Shown: one piece after another, positions 22,264 to 45,749 of the stretch
Layout of the letters: every line of letters starts with the position of its first letter
Position numbering within the stretch: the first letter of the stretch is position 1
IMG/VR virus record: IMGVR_UViG_3300036853_000446
Location: 124,001-188,000 of that record
DNA: 64,000 bases
Reading direction: 5' to 3' (one strand)
Program-made: the position numbers and the translations under genes
The notes under the pieces: generated by a model
What the model saw: only the letters and a program-made list of their open reading frames with translations
Told to the model about the DNA's origin: nothing
Database searches by the model: none

Positions 22264-22893
22264 TCAGTGGATGAGCTTCGCGATGTCCTGCCAGGTTTCG
22301 AGTTCTGCTCTCCAACGCCCGATATCTTCTTCGGTCGTACGATTCTCGCCGTTGATGGTGATGCTGATCCCACCCGCTGCCGCCCGAGCCAAGTACTTGA
22401 GCTTCAACTTGGCGACGTCGCGGAGGATCCCGAAATCGGCCTGAGGAAAATCCTTAATAAACTCCAGGACTTCAGACTCCTTCGAATACATGCCAAGCCC
22501 TGCCCACTGAACGTGCTTCTGGGAATCGAGGTACATGACGCCCGCTAGGTCCATGTACGTGCTGGCCTTCGGCTTGTTCCATCGCCCCGTCTTCGGATTT
22601 TCCGTCTGGCTCATGAAGCGGAAGCCCTTTTTCGGCTTCATTTCGAGCCAGTACCGGATCTTGCACCGCAGCTTGAAGCTGTACGGGTAGTCGTCGACGT
22701 TGTACGCCGTCTGCTCGCTGTCGTGGCCGTAGAGCGGCGTGCCACGACTCGCCACCCTTGCTCCCGCGACGCGCTCGGCCAGACCGAGAAGCTCGCTCGC
22801 GAGTCGCTGCCGCTCGGGATGGCGAGTCTGAGCGTACGCGAGGATTTCGTGAAGCTCACGGGTCAGGTGCTCGGGGCTGGCAATTTTCTGCAT
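22264..22893 (-). CDS. KIASP-leader protein
   Basis: MQKIASPEHLTRELHEILAYAQ..PER..LA..L..LAERVA. Confidence 0.8.
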   Translation of the reverse strand: MQKIASPEHLTRELHEILAYAQTRHPERQRLASELLGLAERVAGARVASRGTPLYGHDSEQTAYNVDDYPYSFKLRCKIRYWLEMKPKKGFRFMSQTENPKTGRWNKPKASTYMDLAGVMYLDSQKHVQWAGLGMYSKESEVLEFIKDFPQADFGILRDVAKLKLKYLARAAAGGISITINGENRTTEEDIGRWRAELETWQDIAKLIH

Positions 22894-22994
22894 CGGTGAT
22901 CTCGCTCTCCTCGTAACGGAGACCATCAAACGAAAACTGCCCGGTGCTGCCTGCCCGTCCGACGAGCACGCAGGTCGACGGCACCGCTCCCAAC

Positions 22995-23324
22995 CTAAAG
23001 CAGATTTGCGCCGCTGGATGCAGCTGCCTCGACGGGATGACCTTCGAAATAGAAGGAGACCGTACCCGGCGCGTTGGATTGAATCCGAGTCAGCCCCAGG
23101 CGGAGCAGGCTCTTCATGTCGTCGCCCATCACGGAAAGGTTGTTGTTCACCTTCGCCGTGAGCATGTGAATCTGATCCTGGACGAAATATTTGTGCTCGA
23201 GAATCTTCGTTGGCGCCAGGTTGCTCACGAAACGCCCGAGGTGGCTGAGCTTTGGTGGAAGCGGATAGTCTCCGCTCCCGTAGGAATTGTCTGCTGCCGC
23301 GATGCGCTCGTAGGAGTAGGTCAT
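22995..23324 (-). CDS. hypothetical protein with YSYER leader variant
   Basis: MTYSYERIAAA; TCGTTTTATCG 13 nt upstream. Confidence 0.7.
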   Translation of the reverse strand: MTYSYERIAAADNSYGSGDYPLPPKLSHLGRFVSNLAPTKILEHKYFVQDQIHMLTAKVNNNLSVMGDDMKSLLRLGLTRIQSNAPGTVSFYFEGHPVEAAASSGANLL

Positions 23325-23347
23325 GTCCTGCAGCTCCGATAAAACGA

Positions 23348-24010
23348 TCAGTGGTAGTCGACCTTCACACCGAGGGTCGCCCATGTCTTGCGAAACATGT
23401 CCAGGCTAATGAAGCGCCGCGCCCGCTCGTGGTTATCCCGCATCCAAGCGTAGAAGGTCTGCGCGTCCCGCTTCTTCTGCGGGTGGTAAGACGTGTCTTG
23501 GAAGAAGCCCGGCTTTCCGGGCGGCCCCTCCATGGCATGGTGATCGGTGATCCGGAAATCCAAGGGAGACGACACGACTTCGATGTAGCCCTTGTCACGT
23601 TGCGGGATCCGGAACTCGAAACTCTCCCCGTTCGGCTCGACGTCGATCGCCCTCAGGTCGGTCATCTCGATGGATATCTCCGTCGGAAAGTCCACTTGAA
23701 CGTCTGTGATAAACCGACAAATCGCGTCGAACCCGCCGCGGGACCCCTCGTCTACGAAAAACCCGCCCATACGCGCAAACCACTCATCGTGTTTGCCCTG
23801 ATACGAGTACGTCAACATAACCGTCATCTCGCGGCATTTCTTCCCGCGCTTCCCGGCATCCGTCAGGTCTGTGACGCGGAGCGAGTCGCTGTACCGGTGA
23901 ACCCGCACCTGGTCGTTCTGAAAGGTCTTGCCGAGCGGCAAACTGCCGGCCGTCAGGTAACGGCGGGCAACACGGTACCGCTGGACGACGCGGGCGACGA
24001 GAGAGGCCAT
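23348..24010 (-). CDS. hypothetical protein with RVV.RY / VARRYL leader
   Basis: MASLVARVVQRYRVARRYLTAG. Confidence 0.75.
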   Translation of the reverse strand: MASLVARVVQRYRVARRYLTAGSLPLGKTFQNDQVRVHRYSDSLRVTDLTDAGKRGKKCREMTVMLTYSYQGKHDEWFARMGGFFVDEGSRGGFDAICRFITDVQVDFPTEISIEMTDLRAIDVEPNGESFEFRIPQRDKGYIEVVSSPLDFRITDHHAMEGPPGKPGFFQDTSYHPQKKRDAQTFYAWMRDNHERARRFISLDMFRKTWATLGVKVDYH

Positions 24011-24042
24011 AACGGTCATGGGACGACAATAGAAAAAATCGG

Positions 24043-24111
24043 GGCTGCGGCGGGGAATCGAACCCCTCAAACCCCCTTCACAGAGGGGCCCACTTCCAAA
24101 GTAACCGCAGC
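24043..24111 (-). tRNA. trnH: tRNA-His(GTG), shortened D-arm
   Basis: GCTGCGG/CCGCAGC acceptor, CCCCT-CT GTG AA-GGGGG, TTCGATT. Confidence 0.6.
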
Positions 24112-24121
24112 ATACACCGAG

Positions 24122-24194
24122 TCAGAGTGGGAAGACTCGAACTTCCAACCCCTTGGCCCCCAGCCAAGTGCTCTGCCAATTGAGCTACACCCTG
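24122..24194 (-). tRNA. trnP: tRNA-Pro(GGG)
   Basis: CTTGG-CT GGG GG-CCAAG. Confidence 0.9.
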
Positions 24195-24306
24195 AGAATC
24201 CCATGCAGCCGCCGTTGAAGGCCGTCTGCATGGGTGGGATCGTCGTTCTTGGGCGCGACGATCCAGCGAGCCGTACGGGGATGGACCCAAGTCCATACGG
24301 CTCTCG

Positions 24307-24391
24307 AGGAAGGCGGAGGTATCGATCCCCAGACCCTTGCGAGTCCCCTTCGTTCAGCAAACGAGGCCAGCACCTTGCTGGTTCACCTTCC
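24307..24391 (-). tRNA. trnS: tRNA-Ser(GCT), A54 T-loop
   Basis: CTCGT-TT GCT GA-ACGAA, long variable arm, ATCGATA loop. Confidence 0.75.
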
Positions 24392-24409
24392 GAATGTCCT
24401 TCACCTTCG

Positions 24410-24482
24410 CGCCCCCGGCAGGACTCGAACCTGCGTCACCGAGCTTCGGAAACTCGTGCCTCATCCACTAGGCTACGGAGGC
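24410..24482 (-). tRNA. trnR: tRNA-Arg(CCG)
   Basis: CGAGT-TT CCG AA-GCTCG. Confidence 0.9.
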
Positions 24483-24571
24483 ATTGTGAAACGAAGGATC
24501 GAACTCCGACCTCTGCATTCCAACTGAAATACGGCCCCTCCTTGCGGATCTTCTTTTGAAGAACCGCGTGC

Positions 24572-24901
24572 ATGATCCACGACTACCAGCGACGCACGTC
24601 CGGTCAGCAACGATACGATGCACTCATCAGACAAATCGTCTCCGAGGTAGACGACGTCACCGAACCGGTCAAGCGGGTTGTCACGAAACTTCCAAGGCTC
24701 ATCGACACATTGGAAGAACTGGTCGAAAACGACGACGAGCTGAGGTCAACAGATCCCCGGGGTGGCAAACGGTACGGAATCGATCAGGTTCTCACGGAAA
24801 TGCGTAAGAGGCTCGAAGCGGTCAAGGATGCAACGACCGACCTCGAATGGGCGTACGACGAGCTAAACAATCGCTTCCAAAAGAACGTCCCGCGCACCTA
24901 A
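24572..24901 (+). CDS. helical protein with HDYQRR leader
   Basis: MIHDYQRR; TCTTTTGAAG 11 nt upstream. Confidence 0.75.
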   Translation: MIHDYQRRTSGQQRYDALIRQIVSEVDDVTEPVKRVVTKLPRLIDTLEELVENDDELRSTDPRGGKRYGIDQVLTEMRKRLEAVKDATTDLEWAYDELNNRFQKNVPRT

Positions 24902-24910
24902 CCAAGTCAG

Positions 24911-24982
24911 CGTCCCCGGAAGGAGTCGAACCTTCGTCGTGCCTTTAGGAAAGGCCCACTCTATCCATTGAGCTACGGGAAC
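24911..24982 (-). tRNA. trnR: tRNA-Arg(CCT)
   Basis: GGCCT-TT CCT AA-AGGCA. Confidence 0.85.
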
Positions 24983-24988
24983 AAAGCG

Positions 24989-25075
24989 CAGAGAGCTGAG
25001 GTAACGATCCCCACACCCTTACGAGTGCCAATCCGCGTCCGACGGATGCCCGAACCTCTCGGGGGTTAACTCTCC
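24989..25075 (-). tRNA. trnS: tRNA-Ser(GGA), atypical (C33, ATCGTTA T-loop)
   Basis: ATCCG-TC GGA CG-CGGAT, long variable arm. Confidence 0.6.
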
Positions 25076-25081
25076 AAACAG

Positions 25082-25154
25082 TCTGGGCGGCCCGACTTGA
25101 ACGGGCAACCTCCGCGCCCCAAACGCGGCACTCTACCAATTGAGCTACGCCCAG
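25082..25154 (-). tRNA. trnP: tRNA-Pro(TGG)
   Basis: CCGCG-TT TGG GG-CGCGG. Confidence 0.92.
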
Positions 25155-25168
25155 ATTAAACTTCGGCC

Positions 25169-25534
25169 ATGGCTGGCGACCGATTCATCTACTTCGAAGA
25201 TCGTGTGCCGACACACGAGGAGATCCGCACAATCCTCGAGAACTACCTCGGCGGCTGTGGCACCGTCACCGAGCCCCAACCGAACTGGTGGATGATCGAC
25301 CTGCCCGGTCGCAACACCTCGACCTTCAAGGGGATCCAAGGAAGCGGGCCCGACGTCTTCACGGACCCCGACTTTGACGTGCGGTGGATCGAGGTCATCT
25401 TCCAGCGAACCGCCGGGCTCCCGCCTTCGCTCGACGTCCTGACCCGCCACGCCGACAGCTTCACGGGTGACGTCGCCAGCTCGTTGGCGCGCACGTTTGC
25501 GGCCTTCTTCCGCGGACGGCTCGAAGACACCTGA
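25169..25534 (+). CDS. hypothetical protein
   Basis: Clean ORF between tRNA and convergent gene. Confidence 0.65.
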   Translation: MAGDRFIYFEDRVPTHEEIRTILENYLGGCGTVTEPQPNWWMIDLPGRNTSTFKGIQGSGPDVFTDPDFDVRWIEVIFQRTAGLPPSLDVLTRHADSFTGDVASSLARTFAAFFRGRLEDT

Positions 25535-25606
25535 GTCAATGACTCGCCTTCCTCTCGAAAAGGAGGACCCGCTCGAGAAAGACCCGCCTGAGGAATATGT
25601 GCAGTC

Positions 25607-26140
25607 TCACTGGTTATCGTACCGGCAGCTCGCGCAATCGGAGTCGCGCGGCTCATCTTCGATGCTGCCACAGCTGCACCCCGTCCAGCGGCCATGTGAG
25701 TGTGACCGTGAACCAGATGAACCCGATGAGCCAGACGAGCCCCCCGTGCCGACAGTGAATAGCCAGACGCTACGGTCGGTCCAGATCAAACGACCCAGTG
25801 TCACCTTCGAAGTCTGACCGCTCTTCTTGCGTACCGTGACTTGGTCCCCGGGACTACCAACGCTCGTCAGCCGAACGCCCCACGATCCGTCACGCAGCTT
25901 GGCCCACGTGGCATCTTCGCCGCCTCGACCAAGCTTGGTCATCCGCCGAATCTCGGCCTCGCTCGGCTCCGGGCCCTCGACGTAAGGGCCCTTCGATGCC
26001 ACCTCGTCCTGTGCCATCAGATCGTCAGCAAGGCGCCCGAGCTTCCTTGCCAGCTTGACCCTCGACGGGCTCGACGATTGGCAATAGGCGAGAATGCTCT
26101 TCAAACCGTCCTGCAGGTGCCGTGGCGAGCGGATCTTCAT
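25607..26140 (-). CDS. KIASP-leader protein, GS-linker and Cys-rich tail
   Basis: MKIRSPRHLQDGLKSILAY..PSR..LA..L..LA; C-terminal CSCG..CASC. Confidence 0.8.
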   Translation of the reverse strand: MKIRSPRHLQDGLKSILAYCQSSSPSRVKLARKLGRLADDLMAQDEVASKGPYVEGPEPSEAEIRRMTKLGRGGEDATWAKLRDGSWGVRLTSVGSPGDQVTVRKKSGQTSKVTLGRLIWTDRSVWLFTVGTGGSSGSSGSSGSRSHSHGRWTGCSCGSIEDEPRDSDCASCRYDNQ

Positions 26141-26215
26141 AATCCATGGCGTGCATCAAAAGAAATCTCGCGGAGAGAGACCGATTTGGAAGCGGAGCAT
26201 CCGGAGATTTCGAAG

Positions 26216-26428
26216 CTAGAACAGCCACATCGAATGGGAGATGGCCAGCATCCCGCATCTCGAGCACGAGGCGGACGACATTGCGCCTCCGTCTTCGTAG
26301 ATCTCCTCCACGCCCTCCCCGTCCCAAACGTGCCCGCAGGGACCACCTTTCGAGCATTCGCAAGCGCACTTCGCGTTGCCGGCGCCGCACGAGTGGATCA
26401 GCACGGGATCTTCAGTCGAATCTGCCAT
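26216..26428 (-). CDS. small Cys-rich protein
   Basis: Seven Cys plus His; CGGTGTA 10 nt upstream. Confidence 0.6.
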   Translation of the reverse strand: MADSTEDPVLIHSCGAGNAKCACECSKGGPCGHVWDGEGVEEIYEDGGAMSSASCSRCGMLAISHSMWLF

Positions 26429-26482
26429 GTGAGGATGTACACCGCGTCCCGCCGGTAATCCATTTGTCGTTCCATACGGATC

Positions 26483-26644
26483 ATGCTCATTGCAGTCATC
26501 CCGCTGGTTTTCACAATCGTTGGCCTGCTCATGTGGGTGCTCGCCTCGAACCCCCTCATCAAAGAAGCCGGCAGAATCATCTTCTTCGCCGCCTTTCTCG
26601 CGCTGATGTTTGCGTTCTCGAGCAAGACGCTGAGCGTCGGCTAA
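26483..26644 (+). CDS. 53-aa two-TM membrane protein (below ORF-track cutoff)
   Basis: MLIAVIPLVFTIVGLLMWVLASNPLIKEAGRIIFFAAFLALMFAFSSKTLSVG; TCCATTTGTCG upstream. Confidence 0.6.
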   Translation: MLIAVIPLVFTIVGLLMWVLASNPLIKEAGRIIFFAAFLALMFAFSSKTLSVG

Positions 26645-26711
26645 CCGGGCTCTGCTGACACCGCACGCGCGCCACATCACGGGTATCGCGCAGCGGGTCG
26701 CGGAACACGAG

Positions 26712-26784
26712 TCAAGATGGGGAGACTTGAACTCCCAACCCCTCCGCCCCGAACGGAGCGCTCTGCCAATTGAGCTACATCTTG
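26712..26784 (-). tRNA. trnP: tRNA-Pro(CGG)
   Basis: CTCCG-TT CGG GG-CGGAG. Confidence 0.92.
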
Positions 26785-26785
26785 G

Positions 26786-26858
26786 CGTCCCCGGAAGGAC
26801 TCGAACCTTCAATCGCCGGTTCCGCAAACCGGTGCTCTATCCATTGAGCTACGGGGAC
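26786..26858 (-). tRNA. trnR: tRNA-Arg(GCG)
   Basis: CCGGT-TT GCG GA-ACCGG; A20 in D-loop. Confidence 0.9.
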
Positions 26859-26864
26859 AAATCG

Positions 26865-26947
26865 TGCTGTCGAGAGGACTTGAACCTCCAAGGAGTTGCC
26901 CCCACCCGTACCTCAAACGAGCGCGTCTGCCTTTCCGCCACGACAGC
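26865..26947 (-). tRNA. trnL: tRNA-Leu(GAG)
   Basis: CTCGT-TT GAG GT-ACGGG, long variable arm. Confidence 0.88.
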
Positions 26948-26978
26948 ATAAACTTTTGATTGCCCACCACCGGGCAAG

Positions 26979-27527
26979 ATGAAGATGCATGACGCCCTCC
27001 TCGAGGACCTCCTGGACCACCGGCTCAACCCTTGTTACGACAAGATCCCCGGTTCTCCCTCGTATGTCCTGATTGACGACAACGCCGTAGAGATCAAGGC
27101 CCCCGTCCGCGTGTTTGTTCCGATGACAGAGGTCACCGACGACGTCGAGGAAAGAACGCTGCTTCTGATCAAGATGGCTGCCGAGAACGGAAGCATCGGC
27201 ATCGAGTGGGATGGATCGTTTCTATCGATCCACAATCATTTCGACACCGTGCATCTACCCTTCGACGTGGTCGTAAAGAATCCTGAGACCAAGATTGATC
27301 TCCCTCCAGACATCAAATACATCAAGCACCGAGATGTGACAGCCGACCGCTTTTACTGTCTCACGCGCAGCGATTTACTCGGGCGACTTCCGCGGTGCCC
27401 CGGCACTATCGCGCACGGTCTCAAGAGCCCAGACAAGCTCGGCTTTCTGATATTTAACCCGAAAGGGATCTTGACCGTCTTCTTCGAGCCGCAAGCGAAA
27501 GCCGTCGATATTCAGGCTCAGGCGTGA
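26979..27527 (+). CDS. hypothetical protein
   Basis: Clean 182-aa ORF between tRNAs. Confidence 0.6.
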   Translation: MKMHDALLEDLLDHRLNPCYDKIPGSPSYVLIDDNAVEIKAPVRVFVPMTEVTDDVEERTLLLIKMAAENGSIGIEWDGSFLSIHNHFDTVHLPFDVVVKNPETKIDLPPDIKYIKHRDVTADRFYCLTRSDLLGRLPRCPGTIAHGLKSPDKLGFLIFNPKGILTVFFEPQAKAVDIQAQA

Positions 27528-27537
27528 GCAAGAGAGG

Positions 27538-27619: not shown

Positions 27620-27674
27620 ATAGACTCTGTGCGCTGCATTCGTCTGCCGGAACTATTTGTCGCCCGGCATCTGT

Positions 27675-28376
27675 ATGACAGCCATACTGCGCGACAAGAC
27701 GACCGTTACGGATGTCAGGCTTGCGCGGCTTCGACAATTCGACGAGCGTTCCAAAGGCTACCCCATCCGCGACATGGTGAAAGGCAGGCTACCCCGCAGC
27801 TTTACCTGGGCCTGTTCACAGCACCTCGACCAAGGCCAAGAAGGCGCATGTGTTGGCTTCGCGCTCGCTCACGATCTCATCGCCAAGCCCGCCCCTGTCA
27901 GAGGCATCACCGCGGAGTTCGCGCGCGAGAAGATTTACTGGCAAGCGCAGCGGGACGATCAGTGGGAAGGCGGCGCTTATCCCGGTGCCACGCCCCAATA
28001 CGAGGGGACCAGCGTCCTCGACGGCGTCAAGGCCATTCAGAAACTGGGCTACATCACGGGGTACCGGTGGGCGTTTAGCCTCGACGACGTCGTCAAGACC
28101 GTCAGCCATTTCGGCCCGATGGTCCTCGGCGTCAACTGGTACGACGGGATGTTCGACACCCACTCTTGTGGGTACCTGCATCTCGCCGGTGCTCTCGCAG
28201 GCGGCCACGCGATTCTCTGCAAAGGCGTCAACATCGCCGCGCGATTCTTCATCCTTCACAACTCGTGGGGATCGAAGTGGGGCGTCAAAGGCGATGCCAA
28301 GATCTCCTGGGAGGACGTCGAGCGTCTTCTCCACGAGGGCGGCGAAGCCTGCGTCCCGGTGCGACGAGCCACTTAG
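27675..28376 (+). CDS. Papain-like (C1) cysteine peptidase
   Basis: DQGQEGACVGF, GGHAIL, HNSWG. Confidence 0.9.
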   Translation: MTAILRDKTTVTDVRLARLRQFDERSKGYPIRDMVKGRLPRSFTWACSQHLDQGQEGACVGFALAHDLIAKPAPVRGITAEFAREKIYWQAQRDDQWEGGAYPGATPQYEGTSVLDGVKAIQKLGYITGYRWAFSLDDVVKTVSHFGPMVLGVNWYDGMFDTHSCGYLHLAGALAGGHAILCKGVNIAARFFILHNSWGSKWGVKGDAKISWEDVERLLHEGGEACVPVRRAT

Positions 28377-31294: not shown

Positions 31295-31882
31295 TCAAAT
31301 CCTCAGGACGAAAACCATGAGGGTGTTGTAAGCATCCGGCGCGAGCTTGAGAATGGCCATCATGGTTATTGCCGCCCCTTGCTCGTACGCATCAGCAGCC
31401 AGATTGGTGATGAGCCCATTCTTCGAGGCGTAAAGTTCGTCACCGGCGAAGTAGGTGAGCACCTCGCCGGAGTTTAGGTCGAACGTCTCCCACAACGAAT
31501 TCGCAAACGTGCCACCGTCCGCGTAATAGGATGCTTCGCCCGAAGCGATGCCCGGCGTGTTTTCGAACGGCACCCCGCGCGCGTCCGCAATGAAGAGCCC
31601 AAGGGGCCTGACTCTCGGATTGTACGCTGCTGGGGGACCGCCCACGGAGCCGTTGGCGACGTCAGGGCGTGTGCACGCAACCGTGCCACCGAGAACGCCG
31701 CGCGTCTTGACCCCCGATAATGTCGTCGAGACGTGGGTCAGGATATTAGGTGGGTTGGTCTGCGTCAGCGCGTCCGGCGTGTACGGCTCACCGGTGACGC
31801 GAATCCCAGAAATATAGAGCGGCTGGATGCGCCTCTGGGTTTCGGCGTAGTCTCCGGAGCTTTGACCGATTTGCAACGGCAT
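31295..31882 (-). CDS. Putative capsid decoration/cement-like structural protein
   Basis: PLGLF..FENTPGIASG..YET-like..TY..GDELYASKNGLIT beta-rich pattern; assignment by resemblance only. Confidence 0.55.
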   Translation of the reverse strand: MPLQIGQSSGDYAETQRRIQPLYISGIRVTGEPYTPDALTQTNPPNILTHVSTTLSGVKTRGVLGGTVACTRPDVANGSVGGPPAAYNPRVRPLGLFIADARGVPFENTPGIASGEASYYADGGTFANSLWETFDLNSGEVLTYFAGDELYASKNGLITNLAADAYEQGAAITMMAILKLAPDAYNTLMVFVLRI

Positions 31883-31915
31883 ACCCGTTGAACCGTCACA
31901 AATGAAAAAGCCAGG

Positions 31916-31992
31916 TGGTAGGCCCGCCCGGATTCGAACCGAGAACAACCCGGGTATGAGCCGGGGACTCTAACCGATTGAGCTACAGGCCC
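31916..31992 (-). tRNA. tRNA-Met/Ile2(CAT), encoded CCA
   Basis: CCCGG-CT CAT AC-CCGGG. Confidence 0.85.
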
Positions 31993-33401: not shown

Positions 33402-34325
33402 ATGCGCATCGCCAACACCCGAGATTTTCAGGTTGCCCTCCTGCAGGTGATCCGTCACGCGAACCAACCGCATCCTTCCCGCGGCGCGATTGCCGAACGA
33501 CTCGAAAGTCTAGGTGAGCGGCTCGGCGCACGGAAGGCGCCCGCAAAAGAGCCCAAGGCTCCAGGCTCACGGTTACGGAAGAAGAAAGACGCGCCGCCGA
33601 TAGGGCGCCAAGTCCTGGTGAACATCGCTCAGAAAGAAGCGCAGCAGCTCGACTATCTGAAGATGACGCTCGCGGGGGCCGTCTCCGAAGTAAAGAAAGA
33701 GGTCAAGGAGATTCGGGAGGGGATCGAACGGCTCCAAGAGGATGCCAAGCTCGACGACAAGGAACTCTCCAAGGCTGACGTCGATGAGAAGTGGGCGGCC
33801 AATGACTACTTTTCGGGGATGCTCCTCGATTCGATCATCAACGCCGTGGATTTTCTGGCGGGCACGCTAGAGGACCACGAGAACATCACCCAAGAGACCG
33901 AGTTGGCCAAGGCCGTGCGGGACTTCCAGAAGAAGATTCCCGACGAGGGTACCTGGCCCAAGGGCAAGGGCGAGAAGCAATTCAACGAGGTCATCAAGGC
34001 GCTCAGTAGCGCCGCCGCCATGGTACCCACGGGGCTGAGCAAGCCGAGCGAGTTGACCAAGCTCCGCGAAGTCTTCGAAGGGATCGCCGACATAGCCAAG
34101 CTCATGACCGGCAAGTCCGTCAGCGTACCGAAGATCCCCAAAGCCCTTGACCCAGAAGACCCCCGACAGCTCGGCTTTGGCTTCTCAGCTTCCAGCCGCC
34201 GGATCGCCAGCACGGCTGAACTCAAGGGTCAGCTCGATGCGATCTGGCAGGCGTCCAGTGAGCCTCATCCGTCACGACAGGCGCTCGGCGCAGCGCTCTT
34301 CAACATCGCCAGTAGCCTCCGCTGA
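33402..34325 (+). CDS. Protein with KIASP-type module at both termini
   Basis: N: MRIANTRDFQVAL..HPSR; C: RRIASTAELKGQL..HPSRQALGAALFNIAS. Confidence 0.8.
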   Translation: MRIANTRDFQVALLQVIRHANQPHPSRGAIAERLESLGERLGARKAPAKEPKAPGSRLRKKKDAPPIGRQVLVNIAQKEAQQLDYLKMTLAGAVSEVKKEVKEIREGIERLQEDAKLDDKELSKADVDEKWAANDYFSGMLLDSIINAVDFLAGTLEDHENITQETELAKAVRDFQKKIPDEGTWPKGKGEKQFNEVIKALSSAAAMVPTGLSKPSELTKLREVFEGIADIAKLMTGKSVSVPKIPKALDPEDPRQLGFGFSASSRRIASTAELKGQLDAIWQASSEPHPSRQALGAALFNIASSLR

Positions 34326-39069: not shown

Positions 39070-39205
39070 GAAACGTAGGCGAGAAGGAGGAAGTCAAAGG
39101 AGGCCGTCAACCGCGTCGCCGCCGCATACCTCAGTCAGTTCACGCTTTCGAGCGGTGGGCATGATTTTCGACGCCGAGCTTATCCATTTGTAACGGCCTC
39201 TTCTC

Positions 39206-39697
39206 GTGAACAAGATCGCGAGCGCCGGGGAGCTGCAGTCAGAGTTGAGACGGCTCCTGAACGAGGCGGTTGCACCGGGAGTCTCCCGCCGCGCAATGGC
39301 CGCCGAGCTGGTTGCGCTCGCCGGTCGGGTGGCGCGCGACAGGCCCTATCCCGAGCAGGACGTGCGCGGATCGGGCGAGTGGGCCGTCTATTTCGAGACC
39401 GAGGCACCGAAGACGATCCATCGGTGGAAATTTCACACCCAGGCGCAGGCGACGGACGAAGCCAAGAAAGCTCAGAAGGAGCAAGGCGGCTTCGTCACGG
39501 TCATGCGCAAGGGCCTCGACGTCGTCGAGGTGGGCCCCGGCGGCAAGGTCACGAAGAACGCCACGGTTCTGAACGTGGTGGCGCGCTACGTGGCTCGACA
39601 AATACCAACAATCAGAACAATTGCGGACAGCTCCGAATCCTGGGCTCGAACCAGGGACCTACGTGTTAACAGCACGTCGCTCTACCAACTGAGCTAA
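39206..39697 (+). CDS. KIASP-leader protein
   Basis: MNKIASAGELQSELRRLL..SRRAMAAELVALAGRVA; C-terminal NVVARYVAR. Confidence 0.8.
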   Translation: MNKIASAGELQSELRRLLNEAVAPGVSRRAMAAELVALAGRVARDRPYPEQDVRGSGEWAVYFETEAPKTIHRWKFHTQAQATDEAKKAQKEQGGFVTVMRKGLDVVEVGPGGKVTKNATVLNVVARYVARQIPTIRTIADSSESWARTRDLRVNSTSLYQLS

Positions 39698-39969: not shown

Positions 39970-39989
39970 TTGGTGAAGATTACACCAGG

Positions 39990-40260: not shown

Positions 40261-40276
40261 CATGAAGGGTTCGAAG

Positions 40277-40347: not shown

Positions 40348-40352
40348 ATAGG

Positions 40353-40424: not shown

Positions 40425-40495
40425 ATGACATTAGTTGCACCACTGCAACACTGACTTTAGATACACGTTTCTCTGACGCCGACGATCGTCGGCAG

Positions 40496-40566
40496 TGGTT
40501 CCCCAGAGGATCGAACTCTGATCGATCGGTTAAGGGCCGATTGCTCTACCGTTGAGCTAGGAAACC
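40496..40566 (-). tRNA. trnK: tRNA-Lys(CTT), C33
   Basis: ATCGG-CC CTT AA-CCGAT. Confidence 0.88.
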
Positions 40567-40577
40567 GCTTGATGCGG

Positions 40578-40650
40578 TGGGTGCGGCGAGCCACGATCTC
40601 GCATCGTTCGGTTTAAAGGACCGACGCTCTGCCAATTGAGCTACACACCC
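40578..40650 (-). tRNA. trnK: tRNA-Lys(TTT), C33, ATCGTGG T-loop
   Basis: TCGGT-CC TTT AA-ACCGA. Confidence 0.82.
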
Positions 40651-40731
40651 ATGAGGGTTGCGATAGCTAGGCTTGCGTTTGAGACGCCATCGTTGAGTCA
40701 TGATCGAAGACCCCTTTCCTTGTTTGGGGTG

Positions 40732-40816
40732 TGAGTCCGTGAAGAATTGAACTTCTTAGGCCTAAAGCCGCGACGTTTACAGCGTCGCCCGTGTCCCAGC
40801 ACGCTCATCCGGACCC
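40732..40816 (-). tRNA. trnY: tRNA-Tyr(GTA)
   Basis: GCGACG-CT GTA AA-CGTCGC, long variable arm. Confidence 0.75.
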
Positions 40817-40892
40817 AATGATTTCAGCTTGTTTGATGCTGCTTCGTTCAAACTCAGATGTGAGGGCGCCTTCGAATTGCGCCCCAGAAACG

Positions 40893-40925
40893 AAAAACCC
40901 GCCACTTCTTCAGAAGGGCGGGTTC
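40893..40925 (-). terminator. Terminator upstream of tRNA array
   Basis: AACCCGCC/GGCGGGTT stem followed by TTTTT on the minus strand. Confidence 0.6.
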
Positions 40926-41420
40926 GGGTTGGTCTCTTCGACCAGATCCTACTACCGCCCTACGTACCCATCTCCTGGCTCGGACCCGCGAAATTGCGAA
41001 TGGAGACGGGGCTTTCATGCTTCGGCGTACGGCCGTCCGCGCACAAATCGCGACCAGCGAGGTCTGCGCCGACGCCATACACGCTATACCCTTGTGCACA
41101 CCACGACTCGCCAGCCGCGAGGGCTGTTCCGAGTATTGGTGATTTGGGGGCGAGGGCGAACATGGGAGGTCTCGTTGACGGTATGTATCGGATCGAGAGG
41201 GGTCGAGAGAATGAGTCTCGGTCCCCGCGCATATGTCTTACGGCCACGAAAGGGAGCTTGCAAGGGGGAAAATGGATTTTGTTTTGCTCTCGTCCTGAGC
41301 CACCGAACACCTTAGCCACCGAACAACGGCTGACCGATCACATCGCCCACCGTGGTCAGGCGGAGGGCACTCATGCTCAGATCGAAATCATGCGTCAGCA
41401 CCGGACGGAGGCCATCCGGG

Positions 41421-42065
41421 TCAGATGCTCGCCTGTGTGATGAGCATCTCGCCGTCGAAGCCCGTCTCGGTCACGTTGCCCGTCGTGAGGTAGAGTGGCT
41501 GGAAGGGAACCCACGGCGCGAGCGGGACCGTGACGAGGCTCGACTCCGGCATGGCGACGTCGTTCATGGTCACCGACACGTGGTGCACGCCGCTGATCGG
41601 ACGGGCGGCTCCCCACGCGACCGTCATGTGGATGAGCGCGCCCTGAGCGAAGCCCGCCATGGTCGTAGCGGCCCACGCGGCGACGGTTATCCCGCCCACG
41701 TCGTGGACGCTACCGACGGCCTGACCCGCGGCGTTGACCCCGAGCGTAATCAAAGGTGCGACGGTCGTTGCATAGGCCGACTGCGCGATCACGATACTGT
41801 GAGCGCCACTGCCCATCGTGAACCAGACGTCGAGCGTACCGCGCGCCGCGCCCACTCTCGGACCCACCTGAGGGTCGACCAGGTTGAAGCGCCCGTTGCC
41901 CCTTGCCACGAACGACTGCCCCGCGAGAATCGGGTACGACCGCAAAGGTGCCATCGAGTTGCCGCGCCACGAGGCCGCGCTCGCGGTGATACTCGCGACG
42001 GGGGTGCCCTGCCGGAAGTCCACTAAGCGGCCGGGGATCGAGGGGGAAACGGTCGAGGTGATCAT
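41421..42065 (-). CDS. Beta-rich LamG/ConA-like putative structural protein
   Basis: GTLDVWF, IHMTVAW, VSVTMND, FDGEM pattern. Confidence 0.5.
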   Translation of the reverse strand: MITSTVSPSIPGRLVDFRQGTPVASITASAASWRGNSMAPLRSYPILAGQSFVARGNGRFNLVDPQVGPRVGAARGTLDVWFTMGSGAHSIVIAQSAYATTVAPLITLGVNAAGQAVGSVHDVGGITVAAWAATTMAGFAQGALIHMTVAWGAARPISGVHHVSVTMNDVAMPESSLVTVPLAPWVPFQPLYLTTGNVTETGFDGEMLITQASI

Positions 42066-42100
42066 GCGCTGAGCGAGCGGACAAAAGGAAAGCGCACCGC

Positions 42101-42808
42101 TTACGACGCTACTTCCCATCTGTCCGTACTCAGATAGTCGTTTAGGCGGAACCGGAACATGGGGTAATCCCCATCTTTGGCGCCGATGAACGACGACGAC
42201 GTGACCTTTGTGACAAGCCAGATGCTGCCATTCCCGACGCCCTCACTATACCAAGAGGCATCGACGCATTTAACCTTCATCCCTGGAGTCAGCTTCGGCT
42301 TGTCCACCAGGCCACTCCACTCAAAATACTCCGGTAACTGCTGGCGAATTTCCTTCTCCAACTGGTCCTTCGTGTAACTTCGGCCGCCGGTTGCCCTCGC
42401 GAGAGCGCCACTCCACTCGGGCACTTCAAACAGAGGGACGATAAACGCGACGTCTTCTTCATACCAGTAATAACCCCCCTTTAGTTCGCCGATGCGGCGC
42501 GCAGCCGGACTCAACAACTTACGGGCGACGCCGCTAGCGACACCAAGGCCGCCGTGGCCTGGGGTGCTCACCCACCGGACGCCGCGCGCGATCTCGTCAA
42601 CGGTCTGAGCGGCGCCCCACGGTGTTGATGGCCCGGAGCCGTCAGGGAACTGCTTGCTCGCGGCTTCGACATCATGCCCGGCGACACGGTAACTCAGATG
42701 CCTCAAAGCAGCAGCCAAACGCGCTCGTGACGGATTGGGGGTGCGAGCGAGCCTAATGACCGCGGCTAGCTCAGCTTGAAGCTCAATTGCGTTACTGATC
42801 TTCTGCAT
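42101..42808 (-). CDS. KIASP-leader protein
   Basis: MQKISNAIELQAEL..NPSRARLAAALRHLSYRVA; cargo TPWGAAQ..WYEED. Confidence 0.8.
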   Translation of the reverse strand: MQKISNAIELQAELAAVIRLARTPNPSRARLAAALRHLSYRVAGHDVEAASKQFPDGSGPSTPWGAAQTVDEIARGVRWVSTPGHGGLGVASGVARKLLSPAARRIGELKGGYYWYEEDVAFIVPLFEVPEWSGALARATGGRSYTKDQLEKEIRQQLPEYFEWSGLVDKPKLTPGMKVKCVDASWYSEGVGNGSIWLVTKVTSSSFIGAKDGDYPMFRFRLNDYLSTDRWEVAS

Positions 42809-42871
42809 TTTGAGGAGAGCCCTTTCCCATCCAACGGAACATCAATGGATTCACAGACCGAAAGTGAATCC

Positions 42872-43165
42872 ATGATTACGCCGTCCCTCTTCACGGTGGG
42901 AGAACTGGTGAAATGGTTCGTCTATATCCTCGAGAGCGAGACGACCGCGCTCACATACACGGGGGCAACCACGAACTTCCCCCGACGGCTCCGGCAACAC
43001 AACGGCGAACTGATCGGCGGGGCCCGCTCGACCTTTCGGGGCCGCCCGTGGAAGCTCTTCCATCTCGAAGGGCCGATGGGAAAGTTCGAAGCGCTTCAGC
43101 GCGAGTACGCGATCAAACGGATGTCGAGGGCAAAAAAGCTCGCGCTCGGACCGCCCGAAGGCTGA
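42872..43165 (+). CDS. GIY-YIG (SLX1-like) nuclease
   Basis: FVYILES..TYTGAT..RRLRQHNGE..GGAR..RPWKL. Confidence 0.88.
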   Translation: MITPSLFTVGELVKWFVYILESETTALTYTGATTNFPRRLRQHNGELIGGARSTFRGRPWKLFHLEGPMGKFEALQREYAIKRMSRAKKLALGPPEG

Positions 43166-43182
43166 CGGTACGGCTACAAAAC

Positions 43183-43548
43183 CTACGCCCTCGGCTTGAT
43201 CTTCATCAGAGCCTGGTGAAAGTCATCGGCTGCGTGCTGGATGATTATGGCCGCCGGGACGTGATCACGGCTGATCTTCTGCACGCCGAGCGCCAGCCAA
43301 CCCAGGCACTCATAGATGTTGTTGGCCGTCTGATCCCCCTTGGCCGCCTTCTTGAGGTCGGCGACGGCCTTCTCGATATCCGCCAGTGCATCCTTCGGCG
43401 GCGCCGGTTCGTCGACCGCAGCCACGACGCGGTTGGCCAAGCCCTCGAGGAGGACGGCAATCTTCCTTCGGGAGCAACCGTCGGTGACCTGCGCGAGGAC
43501 CCGTCGAATTTCGGTCTGCAATTGTTGAGGTGTTGCGATCTCGGGCAT
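43183..43548 (-). CDS. KIASP-leader protein
   Basis: MPEIATPQQLQTEIRRVLA..SRRKIAVLLEGLANRVVAA. Confidence 0.78.
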   Translation of the reverse strand: MPEIATPQQLQTEIRRVLAQVTDGCSRRKIAVLLEGLANRVVAAVDEPAPPKDALADIEKAVADLKKAAKGDQTANNIYECLGWLALGVQKISRDHVPAAIIIQHAADDFHQALMKIKPRA

Positions 43549-43651
43549 TGGCGAATTCCTCAACGATCCAACGTCAATCAAAGGTTCCTCGACGACTTGC
43601 GATCCTCGCAGATCGACCTTGTCGGGACCCTCGAGAAAAGCCAGCCGCGTG

Positions 43652-43996
43652 TCACGCCACGTGCCGCGGTCGATCGGGACGACGGATCTTCGTGGGCCCG
43701 ATCAATTTGTTTCGAGCGTCGAGCCGAGCCAGCACGTCAGCAACGGGGTCCCTGACGGCCAACTCCGCCCGAGAAGCGAGCCGGGCCCGAATCCGCGCCT
43801 CCCTGCGCCCGCATTCCTCCGTCTTCGCGTAAGCATCGTCCTGCCTCAACCGGCGCATCCCCTCTCGGCTGCTTTTTCGGGAGCACAGCCGGCAACGGCT
43901 CTGGAGCCCCGAGGGACGGTCCCGACGGGCATTGAAGTCCTCTGCTGGGAGGTCCTCGAGACAGCGAGAGCAGCGCGGCACCGGTAGACGATACAC
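43652..43996 (-). CDS. Zn-finger protein (endonuclease VII N-terminal-like)
   Basis: CSRC..F..R..R.SGLQSRCRLC; no catalytic domain seen. Confidence 0.55.
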   Translation of the reverse strand: MYRLPVPRCSRCLEDLPAEDFNARRDRPSGLQSRCRLCSRKSSREGMRRLRQDDAYAKTEECGRREARIRARLASRAELAVRDPVADVLARLDARNKLIGPTKIRRPDRPRHVA

Positions 43997-44452
43997 CTCT
44001 CGAGTTCACCACGATATCGAGAGGGGATGTTCAGGAGGTCGGTCACGACCTCACACGACCCCGCACCGCTGGAGGTAGGGGCGGACACCTATCCTTGAAG
44101 AAAGGGTGCTCTTCAACGTTTCACGATTCACAACAAGTTACTCACAGTGACACCACACCCACACTGGGGTCTCACGGTCAAATCGCGCTCACCGAGAATC
44201 CTCAACCTTTGGGTTAACACCAGGTGCGAAAAACGCCCTCACCGTGGAGAGAACCTCCAAATAGGTCAGGCCGCGTCGCGTGACGCTGTCATCGGCTCAT
44301 CCAGTAGCCATCGATGCCGGTCGTTCTCTCATGACCGTGTTCGTCGAGATAGGAGAAGTACCGAGCCTTTACCTCGAGAACGGTCTGTCGCTCGACGTGG
44401 ACTTTGCCCGGGTCGCCGTGGCCATGCCGGTAGTCGCTCTACAGGTTCACGA

Positions 44453-44794
44453 TCAGCCTTTGCTTTTCTTGACCTTAACGATGTTCTTCTCGCTGGCGAT
44501 GTCGGGGGTGCCATGACGACCGCCCATGTTGAGGACCCATCCAGCGGGACCCTTCATCACGGCCTTGCCCGTATGTTCCTTGCCAAAGCGGTCGACGATC
44601 GTCACCCGATCGCCCCGGCCGATGCTGTCAACCAGGGCCTCGGGATCGTCGGAGGCTTCCTTGCCGATGACCTCATTCGCCAGGCGTTGTAGCTCGGAAG
44701 CGATCCGGGATCGGGATGGCCTCGCCGAGCGGGCATACGCGAGCAAGTCGTGAAGATCAGACTGGAGTTCCTGAGGTGAAGCGATCTTGTTCAT
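44453..44794 (-). CDS. KIASP-leader protein with small SH3-like cargo
   Basis: MNKIASPQELQSDLHDLLAYARSARPSRSRIASELQRLA; GDRVTIVDRFG. Confidence 0.82.
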   Translation of the reverse strand: MNKIASPQELQSDLHDLLAYARSARPSRSRIASELQRLANEVIGKEASDDPEALVDSIGRGDRVTIVDRFGKEHTGKAVMKGPAGWVLNMGGRHGTPDIASEKNIVKVKKSKG

Positions 44795-44993
44795 GTGATG
44801 ATGACCCTCAGACCTTCTGAGACCACAAATGAAATCTGCGCCTCATAGGGCGCCCGAGCCAAGTCGGATGAAGTCTCTTGGCGCTGAACTACTTGGACCG
44901 AAGCCAGTCCAACTTCTCTTCGTCGCCAGGGGTCGGCGTTCGCGCTCGTCCTTTCACAGTCAGGCCTGAAGACCGTAAGATGAAACCGGTCCG

Positions 44994-45749
44994 TCAACCA
45001 CGGTCCATCTCGGTTTCCAATCGCTTGATGAAGTCCGCAGTAGGCATCCCGCGGATGTCCAGAAACAGCGAATCTTCGTTCAGGTAGACCGCTTGTGCCT
45101 TAAACCAGACGGTGTTGTCGCGGTCGTTCCGTCGCTTTGCCCACGGCACCTTCAAGTTCGGCTTCACCTGCCAACCGTGTTGAGGCAGCTCTTGCAGGAT
45201 ACGGGCGCGGGCATCCGGATACTTCTCGTGGCGGAGGTCGCCGGGCAGGCTCTGCTTGCGATCCTTCTCTACGCGGCGACGCTCGGGTCCCAGTTCTTTC
45301 GCACGGTCCCGAATCTTCTGCCCGTCAGCCCGCTCCTGCTCCCTCTGGCGCTTCATCGACTCGATCTGCTGCTCGAGCACTCGCTCGGCGCGTTGCCGTT
45401 CACGCTCGTCGTCCCGATCCTTCTCCTCGAGCACCTCGGGAATCTCGAACTTGGCGACGAAGGCGGCATCCAGGATCTGTGCAGCGTCGCCGTTTCCGTG
45501 ATTTTGCGCCTTCTGGACGGCTCTCCACCGAGCGGCGTCTACTTCGTCGGGACTAGGCCGAGCCCCGGATGGGAAGCCGAGAAGCTTGAGGGCCACCTCG
45601 TATTTTTGATGGTGAGTGCTCGCAAGCCTACTGGCCAAGCTCCGCAGATGTGTGGCGATCCTTTTCCGCGAAGGGGTGCCTGTCCGCGTATACGCAAGAA
45701 CGGCTCGAAGTTCGTCCTGCAGCTCGGTAGGGGATGCAATTTTCTTCAT
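44994..45749 (-). CDS. KIASP-leader protein with degenerate J-like segment
   Basis: MKKIASPTELQDELRAVLAY..PSRKRIA; LKLLGFPSGARPSPDEV without HPD. Confidence 0.8.
   Translation of the reverse strand: MKKIASPTELQDELRAVLAYTRTGTPSRKRIATHLRSLASRLASTHHQKYEVALKLLGFPSGARPSPDEVDAARWRAVQKAQNHGNGDAAQILDAAFVAKFEIPEVLEEKDRDDERERQRAERVLEQQIESMKRQREQERADGQKIRDRAKELGPERRRVEKDRKQSLPGDLRHEKYPDARARILQELPQHGWQVKPNLKVPWAKRRNDRDNTVWFKAQAVYLNEDSLFLDIRGMPTADFIKRLETEMDRG

What the first reader, a model, noticed from the sequence alone, without database searches (positions are those of the whole stretch)
22264..45749. A ~43-aa KIASP-ELQ-PSR helical module in 8 genes (9 copies)
Consensus M-x-[KR]IASPxELQxELxx[ILV]LAYAxxxxPSRxx[LI]AxxLxxLAxR[VL]A at starts 22893(-), 26140(-), 33402(+), 39206(+), 42808(-), 43548(-), 44794(-) and 45749(-). 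The sequences after it are unrelated. The 33402 protein has a second copy at its C-terminus (RRIASTAELKGQL..HPSRQALGAAL), so the module acts as a position-independent domain. I do not recognise it as a named family.
Basis: seen in the sequence. Interest (0 to 1): 0.88.

Follow-up and report, generated by a model that had tools for sequence, protein, structure and literature searches.

The report
Shared helical tag on huge-phage proteins
A lineage of uncultivated huge phages attaches the same 44-residue two-helix module, usually at the N-terminus, to hundreds of otherwise unrelated small proteins; it matches no named family and most likely works as a common docking or address tag whose destination (perhaps the capsid) is still unknown.

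Summary
All eight genes and nine copies sit at the stated coordinates. Each copy scores 25-68 bits against a profile built from the other eight; shuffled copies score at most 13 bits. The regions after the module are unrelated to one another.

The window is part of a 407-kb huge-phage contig of the Bacillus-phage-G / Tunturi-5 capsid lineage. At least three more module genes lie elsewhere in that genome.

A profile search of 1.84 billion proteins finds 667 clusters. All those examined are metagenomic, nearly all carry the module at residues 1-45, and their cargoes are extremely diverse. Pfam, NCBIfam, PHROGs, PDB, BFVD, cultured phages and 185k bacterial genomes give no match.

AlphaFold predicts a confident helix-loop-helix on a flexible linker. 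Natural tandem and both-ends versions exist.

Orthologous cargoes in related phages carry a different short N-terminal tag (YSYDR) or none, so the module behaves as a swappable label.

The best reading is a shared docking or address domain, possibly for loading proteins into the procapsid. The function itself is not shown.

The parts
22264..22893 (-). Module gene 1 (209 aa). The module is residues 1-45 (nt 22759-22893). The cargo is a clade-wide conserved 'PLY' domain. The gene lies just upstream of the 771-aa VWA protein gene at 19551-21866.
   Evidence: 63 bits leave-one-out. The cargo has 337 homologs; of the 120 listed, 17 carry the module, 6 carry the YSYDR tag, and most have another N-terminus. 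Synteny with the VWA gene is conserved in L082.
25607..26140 (-). Module gene 2 (177 aa). The module is residues 1-44 (nt 26009-26140). The cargo has a small beta-rich region and a Cys-rich tail.
   Evidence: 43.8 bits leave-one-out. No Pfam or PDB match to the cargo.
33402..34325 (+). Bivalent member (307 aa). N-terminal module at nt 33402-33533 and C-terminal module at nt 34191-34322. They are joined by disordered linkers to an all-helical core that includes a 51-residue helix.
   Evidence: two domains, 66.5 and 62.2 bits. AF2 model. Ortholog P0002 (51% identity) keeps both modules.
39206..39697 (+). Module gene 4 (163 aa, GTG start). The module is nt 39206-39340.
   Evidence: 43.9 bits.
42101..42808 (-). 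Module gene 5 (235 aa). The module is nt 42674-42808. The cargo is DUF7007 (PF22653, residues 61-165).
   Evidence: 49.7 bits. Orthologs P0158-P0160 keep the module. Seven of the ~200-aa orthologs among P0162-P0171 (P0162-P0168, P0171) replace it with the short YSYDR tag.
43183..43548 (-). Module gene 6 (121 aa). The module is nt 43414-43548. The cargo is small and helical.
   Evidence: 33 bits.
44453..44794 (-). Module gene 7 (113 aa). The module is nt 44660-44794. The cargo is small and beta-rich.
   Evidence: 65.5 bits.
44994..45749 (-). Module gene 8 (251 aa). The module is nt 45615-45749. The cargo has a charged coiled-coil-like middle and a C-terminal domain.
   Evidence: 68.1 bits. No Pfam or PDB match.

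Best explanation
The module is an autonomous helix-loop-helix domain of about 44 residues. Phages of one sub-lineage of the Phage-G/Tunturi-5-like huge phages graft it onto a hypervariable set of small soluble proteins. The attachment is through a flexible linker, usually at the N-terminus and sometimes at the C-terminus or in tandem.

It acts as a common docking or address tag. Its conserved face is wider than a lone hairpin needs, and that face packs against another hairpin or against one conserved receptor. All tagged proteins of an infection are thereby brought to the same phage-built assembly. Members with two modules (33402-34325; P0156) act as cross-linkers or scaffold.

The favoured destination is the procapsid interior, so the cargoes would be packaged and delivered with the DNA. 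This would resemble the T4 capsid-targeting sequence on internal proteins and the helix-loop-helix by which the P22 scaffolding protein binds coat protein.

What is shown: the domain, its fold prediction, its architectures, its distribution, its tag-like swapping and its selection at the protein level. What is inferred: the binding, the common destination and the capsid.
For: 1. Family size and position. 667 protein clusters match at E<=1e-3 and 313 at E<=1e-10. Among the 150 best hits, 139 carry a single module starting within the first three residues. Conservation stops abruptly after R-V-A-[GA], and nothing is conserved beyond that point.

2. Cargo diversity. 136 cargoes fall into 111 BLAST clusters. 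They have no transmembrane segments, a median length of 91 aa, and almost no Pfam hits.

3. Tag swapping. Orthologs of two different cargoes carry the module, a ~10-residue YSYDR tag (sometimes duplicated), or neither. The two cargoes are DUF7007 (45-68% identity) and the 'PLY' protein (47-88% identity). An element that can be exchanged for a short peptide on the same domain behaves as a label, not as part of the cargo's fold.

4. Fold. A helical hairpin at pLDDT 93-97, flanked by disordered linkers. A natural tandem pair folds to four helices with pTM 0.69.

5. Conserved surface. On helix 1 the conserved arc spans about 200 degrees and includes polar E9, Q11 and E13. R28 is invariant and K3, I4, A5 and R41 are about 90-98% conserved over 204 unique modules.

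6. No concerted evolution. Modules are no more alike within a genome (0.42) than between genomes (0.47). All paralogs are held to one consensus, as expected for one shared partner.

7. Multivalent forms. Both-ends proteins P0001 and P0002, tandem P0156, and P0049/L237.

8. Capsid hint. In the 371-kb relative, a module gene lies between the portal-965aa-235aa genes and the head maturation protease. It starts 3 nt after the upstream stop codon and lies within a few bases of the protease match. In L082, L073, L088 and L102 a module gene lies 0.8-2.7 kb downstream of the major head protein.
Against: No binding partner or destination has been identified, and there are no proteomic or expression data.

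Only 3 of 80 loci around the very conserved major head protein (1.07 Mb in total) contain a module gene. Most module genes, including all eight in the window, lie among small ORFans and not near recognised structural genes. The capsid link therefore rests on a few contexts.

No conserved prohead-protease-type site ([LI]-x-E or [SAG]-x-E) marks the module boundary, and there is no enrichment of a repeated R-V-A after it. No similarity was found to the putative scaffold or to other head-operon proteins.

The packing of two hairpins is inferred only from pTM and from weak, non-significant four-helix-bundle matches.
Confidence: 0.45

Rival explanations
1. It is a plain self-association domain. Each protein uses the hairpin only to form its own dimer or tetramer (four-helix bundle), and there is no common destination or shared partner.
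For: Two-helix hairpins of this size commonly dimerise. The tandem copy is predicted as four helices with pTM 0.69. The only weak sequence and fold matches are tetramerisation helices and generic four-helix bundles. The hydrophobic stripe is wider than a hairpin needs.
Against: On orthologous cargo the module is exchanged for a ~10-residue YSYDR peptide or for nothing, which is hard to reconcile with a structural oligomerisation role. At least 12 co-expressed paralogs per genome keep one consensus instead of diverging to avoid mixed oligomers. Conserved polar surface residues and both-ends proteins fit cross-linking or a shared partner better.
Confidence: 0.25
2. It is a ribbon-helix-helix-like DNA-binding dimer domain that anchors diverse cargoes to one DNA motif. 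Phage-G-type phages are known for lineage-specific expansions of small DNA-binding domains.
For: The layout is a short conserved N-terminal segment (K-I-A-S), a 15-residue helix, a turn, and an S-R N-cap starting a 16-residue helix, in about 45 residues. This resembles RHH proportions. Cargoes are mostly basic (median pI 8.7). Lineage-specific expansions of zinc ribbons and Myb-type HTH domains in phage G are reported in PMC7824862.
Against: No beta strand is predicted, even in the natural tandem copy where a ribbon could form. No RHH family appears in the Pfam scans of 158 members. No RHH protein appears in a PDB profile search at E<=10. There is no conserved Gly in the turn and only one hydrophobic residue in the would-be strand. 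The DNA motif upstream of module genes is a general promoter-like element also found before many untagged genes.
Confidence: 0.08
3. It is a handle for a phage-encoded chaperone, protease or VWA machine. It would be a client or degron tag that controls the folding, timing or turnover of accessory proteins.
For: The same window encodes a GroEL-type chaperonin (10809-12404), a DnaJ-domain protein (47064-48095) and two VWA proteins (12889-14400, 19551-21866). One module gene is syntenic with the VWA gene in two phages.
Against: The VWA family (phrog_2426) occurs in hundreds of cultured phages that lack the module. In most relatives the gene upstream of the VWA gene has no module. Nothing links the chaperonin or DnaJ to the module beyond being in the same genome.
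Confidence: 0.1
4. It is a recombination cassette junction. The conserved 5' end would persist because it mediates shuffling of downstream cargo, as in polymorphic toxin loci, and the peptide itself would have no function.
For: Conserved head, hypervariable tail, adjacent tandem genes (L199, L214, L237), and swapped N-termini among orthologs.
Against: Third codon positions are saturated (31% identity) while amino acids are conserved, so there is no DNA homology to recombine on. The module is also conserved when it is C-terminal. A confident fold is predicted.
Confidence: 0.04

Closest known systems
T4 capsid-targeting sequence (CTS) on internal proteins IPI-III, Alt, gp67 and gp68
   Same: A shared N-terminal element sits on otherwise unrelated, hypervariable, often basic small proteins. 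The genes are scattered through accessory regions, with some inside the head operon between portal and protease, as in L070. The role is that of an address label.
   Different: The CTS is about 10 residues, strictly N-terminal, and removed by the prohead protease after [LI]-x-E. This module is a folded 44-residue hairpin, also occurs at C-termini and in tandem, and shows no conserved protease site. Packaging has not been demonstrated. There is no sequence similarity.
Helix-loop-helix coat-binding domain of the P22 scaffolding protein (and phi29-type scaffold hairpins)
   Same: It is a helix-loop-helix of about 40 residues with essential basic residues, on a flexible tether at the end of an elongated helical protein. 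In engineered P22 systems it has been used to load foreign cargo into procapsids. The bivalent 307-aa protein at 33402-34325 has a scaffold-like build.
   Different: There is no detectable sequence or Foldseek similarity. Here the hairpin is spread over dozens of different proteins per genome, not one scaffold. The putative scaffold gene of relatives (L082 4403-5725) lacks it.
Encapsulin cargo-loading peptides and bacterial-microcompartment encapsulation peptides
   Same: They are terminal, position-flexible (N or C), linker-tethered amphipathic elements that send diverse cargo into a protein shell. Encapsulin shells share the HK97 fold with phage capsids.
   Different: Those tags are short peptides or single helices, and their genes sit next to the shell gene. 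This is a two-helix domain in a phage, mostly far from the capsid gene.
Dockerin-type and docking-domain systems; N-terminal trafficking domains of polymorphic toxins (e.g. LXG/WXG100 hairpins)
   Same: One conserved small domain is fused to a highly variable set of C-terminal domains. Multivalent scaffold versions exist. Some of these domains are helical hairpins.
   Different: No cohesin-like receptor or secretion system has been identified. The cargoes are small ORFan domains, not recognisable toxins. The family is restricted to phage genomes.

Membership tests
Any named protein family (Pfam-A, NCBIfam, PHROGs) | Significant profile match over the module | tested here: not met
   No hit covers residues 1-45 in 8 window proteins (Pfam E<=1, PHROGs E<=0.01, NCBIfam E<=0.1). 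The same is true of 150 family representatives (Pfam).
T4-type capsid targeting sequence | Short (~10 aa), strictly N-terminal peptide | tested here: not met
   The module is a 44-residue folded hairpin. C-terminal and tandem copies exist.
T4-type capsid targeting sequence | Removal by the prohead protease at a conserved [LI]-x-E (or [SAG]-x-E) site at the end of the tag | tested here: not met
   The boundary is L-A-[DEN]-R-V-A-[GA], with no conserved Glu site and nothing conserved after it. Actual cleavage cannot be tested here.
T4-type capsid targeting sequence | Tagged proteins are present inside the virion | not testable with these tools
   The phages are uncultivated and no proteome exists. 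There is only gene-context evidence: L070 between portal and protease, and L073/L082/L088/L102 downstream of the major head protein.
Scaffolding-protein coat-binding helix-loop-helix (P22 type) | Helix-loop-helix of about 40 residues with conserved basic residues on a flexible tether | tested here: met
   AF2 gives H6-20 and H27-42 at pLDDT 93-97, followed by a disordered linker. R28 is invariant and R41 is 89% conserved.
Scaffolding-protein coat-binding helix-loop-helix (P22 type) | Homology to, or location in, the scaffold gene of the head operon | tested here: not met
   hhalign of the module against the L082 440-aa and 206-aa head-operon proteins gives no alignment. There is no PDB sequence or fold match.
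Scaffolding-protein coat-binding helix-loop-helix (P22 type) | Binds the interior of the procapsid | not testable with these tools
   This needs co-expression with the coat protein, or multimer structure prediction, which was not available here.
Ribbon-helix-helix superfamily | N-terminal beta strand pairing in a dimer, G-x-[STN] turn, and profile similarity to RHH families | tested here: not met
   No strand appears in the monomer or in the natural tandem model. The turn has no conserved Gly. No RHH hit appears in Pfam or in the PDB profile search. A monomer model cannot fully exclude a ribbon.
WXG100/LXG-type secretion hairpins | A ~100-residue hairpin with a W-x-G turn, encoded with a type VII secretion system | tested here: not met
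   The hairpin is 44 residues with a P-S-R turn. There are no Pfam WXG/LXG hits. The family was not found in 185k bacterial or archaeal genomes by pattern scan.

The most novel reading that the evidence does not exclude
Phage-G-like huge phages run a cargo-addressing system with several interchangeable tags: the 44-residue KIASP hairpin and the ~10-residue YSYDR peptide. The tags route a fast-evolving repertoire of small proteins into one phage-built compartment, most plausibly the capsid for co-injection with the DNA. Bivalent hairpin proteins would act as the internal scaffold. This would be a previously unknown, domain-based protein-loading code in tailed phages.
Probability: 0.25. Interest if true: 0.85.

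Novelty: new variant of a known kind. Interest (0 to 1): 0.68.

Why it matters
Huge phages carry hundreds of small genes of unknown function. A shared tag that marks dozens of them per genome sorts this material into one functional class: proteins that go to the same place or bind the same partner. It also gives a direct experimental handle. Tagging a reporter would show where the tag sends it, and pulling on the tag would identify what it binds.

If the destination is the capsid, the tagged set would be the phage's injected arsenal, and the hairpin could become a tool for loading foreign proteins into large capsids. If the module is only an assembly domain, it is still a large protein domain family, not found in any library searched here, of at least 667 clusters at 50% identity.

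Tried and rejected
1. DNA repeat or recombination cassette: rejected, because third codon positions are saturated.

2. Module-specific operator. The motif wTCCwTTTG[AT]T ends 12-33 nt upstream of 7 of 8 module genes. It also precedes many untagged genes (27 hits against 9.7 expected), so it is a general promoter-like element.

3. Second R-V-A as a cleavage repeat after the module: no enrichment (4/136 against 2.5% background).

4. General linkage to the head operon: only 3 of 80 major-head-protein loci carry a module gene.

5. Concerted evolution within genomes: absent.

6. RHH fold: not supported.

7. Similarity to putative scaffold or head proteins: none.

8. Fold searches of the tandem and bivalent models against PDB and BFVD: nothing below E 0.4.

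9. Cultured phages: tblastn with P0017 and with the bivalent protein found nothing.

10. GTDB genomes: 8 pattern hits, none a true module.

11. Literature string search for KIASP, YSYDR and YDYDRR: nothing relevant.

The word-indexed protein search on residues 1-46 found only 2 proteins. The degenerate DNA patterns catch only about a third of copies, so copy numbers per genome are lower bounds.
Full report
**Observation.** A profile built from the nine copies scores them at 66-78 bits against the six-frame translation of the window. The next best segment reaches 6 bits. In a leave-one-out test every copy scores 25-68 bits against a profile of the others, and the best of 1000 shuffles of that copy scores at most 13.2 bits.

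Between copies, amino-acid identity averages 38%. First and second codon positions are 54% identical and third positions 31%. The similarity is therefore kept by selection on the protein and is not a DNA repeat. The sequences downstream of the module are unrelated (best BLASTP E = 0.44).

**Where the window comes from.** The chaperonin gene at 10809-12404 is 100% identical to IMGVR_UViG_3300036853_000446, a 407,634-bp viral contig. Window coordinate + 124,000 gives the contig coordinate. The window also encodes:
- a RecD2-like helicase
- an NAD-dependent ligase
- a B12-dependent ribonucleotide reductase
- a clamp-loader delta-like protein
- a GroEL-type chaperonin
- a DnaJ-domain protein
- two VWA proteins
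- a large DNA methyltransferase.

Relatives of this phage share a 293-aa major head protein. It is 91-98% identical in the 80 best of 532 related IMG/VR stretches, many on contigs of 230-530 kb. It is 83% identical to an uncultured 485-kb phage, 48% to Tunturiibacter phage Tunturi_5 and 38% to Bacillus phage G. Tunturi_5 is a 309-kb myovirus of an acidobacterial host with 58% GC (PMC11924767).

**Extent of the family.** A profile of the nine copies was searched against 1.84 billion representative proteins. It finds 667 at E<=1e-3 and 313 at E<=1e-10. Among the best 150:
- 139 carry a single module starting within the first three residues
- four carry two copies
- the few "internal" ones are mostly mis-called starts.

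All members looked up are metagenomic and unnamed, or "hypothetical protein". Degenerate DNA patterns for K-I-A-S-P-Q-[DE]-L-Q found true modules in only a handful of IMG/VR contigs. These are the 407-kb contig itself, a 371-kb contig, a 241-kb contig, a 93-kb contig and a 7-kb fragment.

One of the loci, L074, lies at contig position 233,830-246,580. It holds three more module genes, so this genome has at least 11 module genes and 12 copies. The patterns catch only about a third of copies. The same pattern found 44 true loci in JGI and ENA metagenomes and none in 185,579 bacterial and archaeal species genomes. Cultured phages have no match.

**Anatomy.** Over 204 unique modules, M1 and R28 are invariant. 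The most conserved other positions are K3 (0.90), I4 (0.98), A5 (0.97), L10 (0.96), E13 (0.88), L14 (0.92), P26 (0.98), S27 (0.88), A32 (0.94), L35 (0.93), L38 (0.98) and R41 (0.89). Conservation ends sharply after L-A-x-R-V-A-[GA], and the next residues show no preference.

AlphaFold2 with a 150-sequence alignment gives helices 6-20 and 27-42 at pLDDT 93-97, followed by a low-confidence linker. On a helical wheel the conserved arc of helix 1 spans about 200 degrees and includes polar E9, Q11 and E13. The conserved arc of helix 2 spans about 140 degrees, plus R41. That is more conserved surface than a lone hairpin needs.

A natural tandem pair (the C-terminus of P0156) folds into four helices with mean pLDDT 82 and pTM 0.69, with no beta strand. 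Its best fold matches are generic four-helix bundles, and none is significant.

The window's bivalent protein is predicted as N-module, disordered linker, all-helical core with a 51-residue helix, disordered linker, C-module. It also has no significant fold match.

**Cargo.** The 136 cargoes of the top hits fall into 111 BLAST clusters, 94 of them singletons. Median length is 91 residues, none has a membrane segment, and median pI is 8.7. Pfam recognises almost nothing. In the window, only DUF7007 in the 42101-42808 protein is recognised. The PDB holds no relatives of the four cargoes tested.

**The module behaves as a swappable label.** This is the most informative result. The DUF7007 cargo of 42101-42808 has orthologs of 63-68% identity that keep the module (P0158-P0160). 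It also has orthologs of 45-51% identity and about 200 residues. Seven of these (P0162-P0168, P0171) begin with a short motif, M-(x)-Y-S-Y-D-R-[RT]-x-A-A.

The cargo of 22264-22893 belongs to a protein conserved across the whole lineage, with 337 homologs on contigs up to 461 kb. Of the 120 listed, 17 start with the module and 6 with the YSYDR motif, twice as a tandem repeat. Most of the rest start with a third kind of N-terminus, M-T-K-T-P-A-Q-L-D-R-E-I.

The YSYDR-type tag also opens five otherwise unrelated ORFs in the window (18160+, 23324-, 35505+, about 46457+, 55604-) and ORFs in other loci of the lineage. Two different N-terminal elements, each spread over unrelated proteins, thus replace one another on the same cargo. 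That is what address or docking tags do, and it is not expected of an integral part of a fold.

**Paralog history.** Modules within one genome are no more alike (0.42) than modules of different genomes (0.47), and the nearest neighbour of each copy is usually in another genome. The paralogs are old, and all are held to one consensus. This fits a single conserved partner, or a common co-assembly, better than independent self-association.

**Context.** Most module genes sit among small ORFans. Seven of the eight in the window are preceded at 12-33 nt by the motif wTCCwTTTG[AT]T. The motif also precedes many untagged genes: 27 hits at >=11 bits against 9.7 +/- 3.0 in shuffles, including the operon with the chaperonin and the DnaJ gene. 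Related forms precede head-block genes in L082. It is therefore a general promoter-like element of these phages and says nothing specific about the module.

Some members are in head-morphogenesis operons:
- **371-kb phage (L070).** The gene order is terminase, portal, 965 aa, 235 aa, module gene, head maturation protease. The module gene starts 3 nt after the preceding stop codon and lies within a few bases of the protease match.
- **L082, L073, L088 and L102.** A module gene lies 0.8-2.7 kb downstream of the major head protein.
- **Caveat.** Only 3 of 80 major-head-protein loci (1.07 Mb) have a module gene at all.
- **Conserved synteny.** The window gene 22264-22893 keeps its position upstream of a 771-aa VWA protein that is 47% identical to its L082 counterpart. 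In most relatives the gene at that position has no module.

**Interpretation.** The following are shown:
- a new, widespread, phage-restricted helix-loop-helix domain
- its tethering by flexible linkers to hypervariable soluble cargo
- its independence of position
- natural multivalent forms
- its interchangeability with a short peptide tag.

The function is inferred. I take it to be a shared docking or address domain that brings all tagged proteins to one assembly, with bivalent members as cross-linkers. The procapsid is the favoured destination. The reasons are the few operon contexts and the precedents of the T4 capsid-targeting sequence and the P22 scaffolding helix-loop-helix. This step is weakly supported.

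The rivals are plain self-oligomerisation, an RHH-like DNA-binding dimer, a chaperone/protease/VWA client tag, and a recombination junction. Each is weighed in its own section of this report. The RHH and recombination readings are disfavoured by direct tests.

**Novelty.** No library searched contains the module, and the literature searches found no description of it. The general idea of a conserved tag on variable cargo is known from several systems. I therefore rate this a new variant of a known kind. It would rank higher if the multi-tag loading system is confirmed.

Noticed in passing
window ORF starts 18160(+), 23324(-), 35505(+), ~46457(+), 55604(-); also L079 19857(-), L095 6304(+), L096 6273(+), L182 600(+): A second, short N-terminal tag of the form [YH]-[SD]-Y-[DE]-R-[RT], usually followed by an Ala-rich stretch, opens unrelated proteins. 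It replaces the KIASP module on orthologs of two cargoes, sometimes as a tandem repeat.
   Followed up: partly
window, 10-nt motif positions include 22925-22934(-), 26155-26164(-), 39182-39191(+), 42841-42850(-), 44825-44834(-), 45773-45782(-), 12813(-), 18138(+), 26467(+), 31898(-), 35481(+), 42081(-), 48101(-): A promoter-like motif wTCCwTTTG[AT]T ends 6-33 nt before start codons, often exactly 15-16 nt. There are 27 hits against 9.7 expected. It precedes both tagged and untagged genes, and similar motifs occur in related phages (L068, L073, L082). It implies very short leaders and many single-gene transcription units.
   Followed up: partly
L082 6467-7348 and loci L084-L163: The 293-aa major head protein of this lineage is 91-98% identical in the 80 best of 532 related IMG/VR stretches, on contigs up to 529 kb. 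Neighbouring proteins (protease 64-75%, VWA 47%) diverge normally. This is unusually strong conservation for a capsid protein.
   Followed up: no
window 31295-31948(-): This is a homolog (47% identity) of the 206-aa gene that lies between the putative scaffold and the major head protein in L082 and L073. Here it sits alone among the tagged small genes, away from any recognised head gene.
   Followed up: no
window 19551-21866(-) and 12889-14400(-): There are two VWA-domain proteins. The 771-aa one (phrog_2426) is 47% identical to its L082 counterpart and about 35% identical to a conserved hypothetical protein in about 500 cultured phage records, for example Serratia, Aeromonas, Dickeya, Klebsiella and Salmonella phages.
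   Followed up: partly
window 18160-18672(+) and 54804-55604(-): These two proteins are paralogous over their first ~80 residues (37% identity). Both begin with the DYDRR tag and share a Y-H-G-T motif. Their function is unknown.
   Followed up: no
window 10402-12794(-), 47064-48095(-): The phage encodes a GroEL-type chaperonin flanked by small genes of 126 and 129 aa, and a DnaJ-domain protein, so it carries protein-folding functions. The nearest chaperonin relative is only 47% identical.
   Followed up: no
window 27657-28376(+), 15616-16215(-), 48865-51843(-): Other annotated genes are a papain-like cysteine protease domain, an HNH endonuclease, and a 992-aa DNA methyltransferase with a weak 4Fe-4S cluster motif match.
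   Followed up: no
homologs of the 22264-22893 cargo (P0203-P0246 etc.): Most orthologs of this lineage-wide protein start with a single amphipathic helix, M-T-K-T-P-A-Q-L-D-R-E-I-A-E-A-L-A. Its pattern (L..E[IL]...LA) resembles helix 1 of the module, so it may be a half-module or an ancestral form. It was not found on any other protein in the 1.5 Mb of fetched loci.
   Followed up: partly
L199, L214, L237 (metagenome contigs); metagenome loci such as L176, L180, L183, L204, L214: Module genes often occur as adjacent pairs. A sub-family has a longer loop in which K-P-D-R replaces P-S-R, and the invariant Arg is kept.
   Followed up: no
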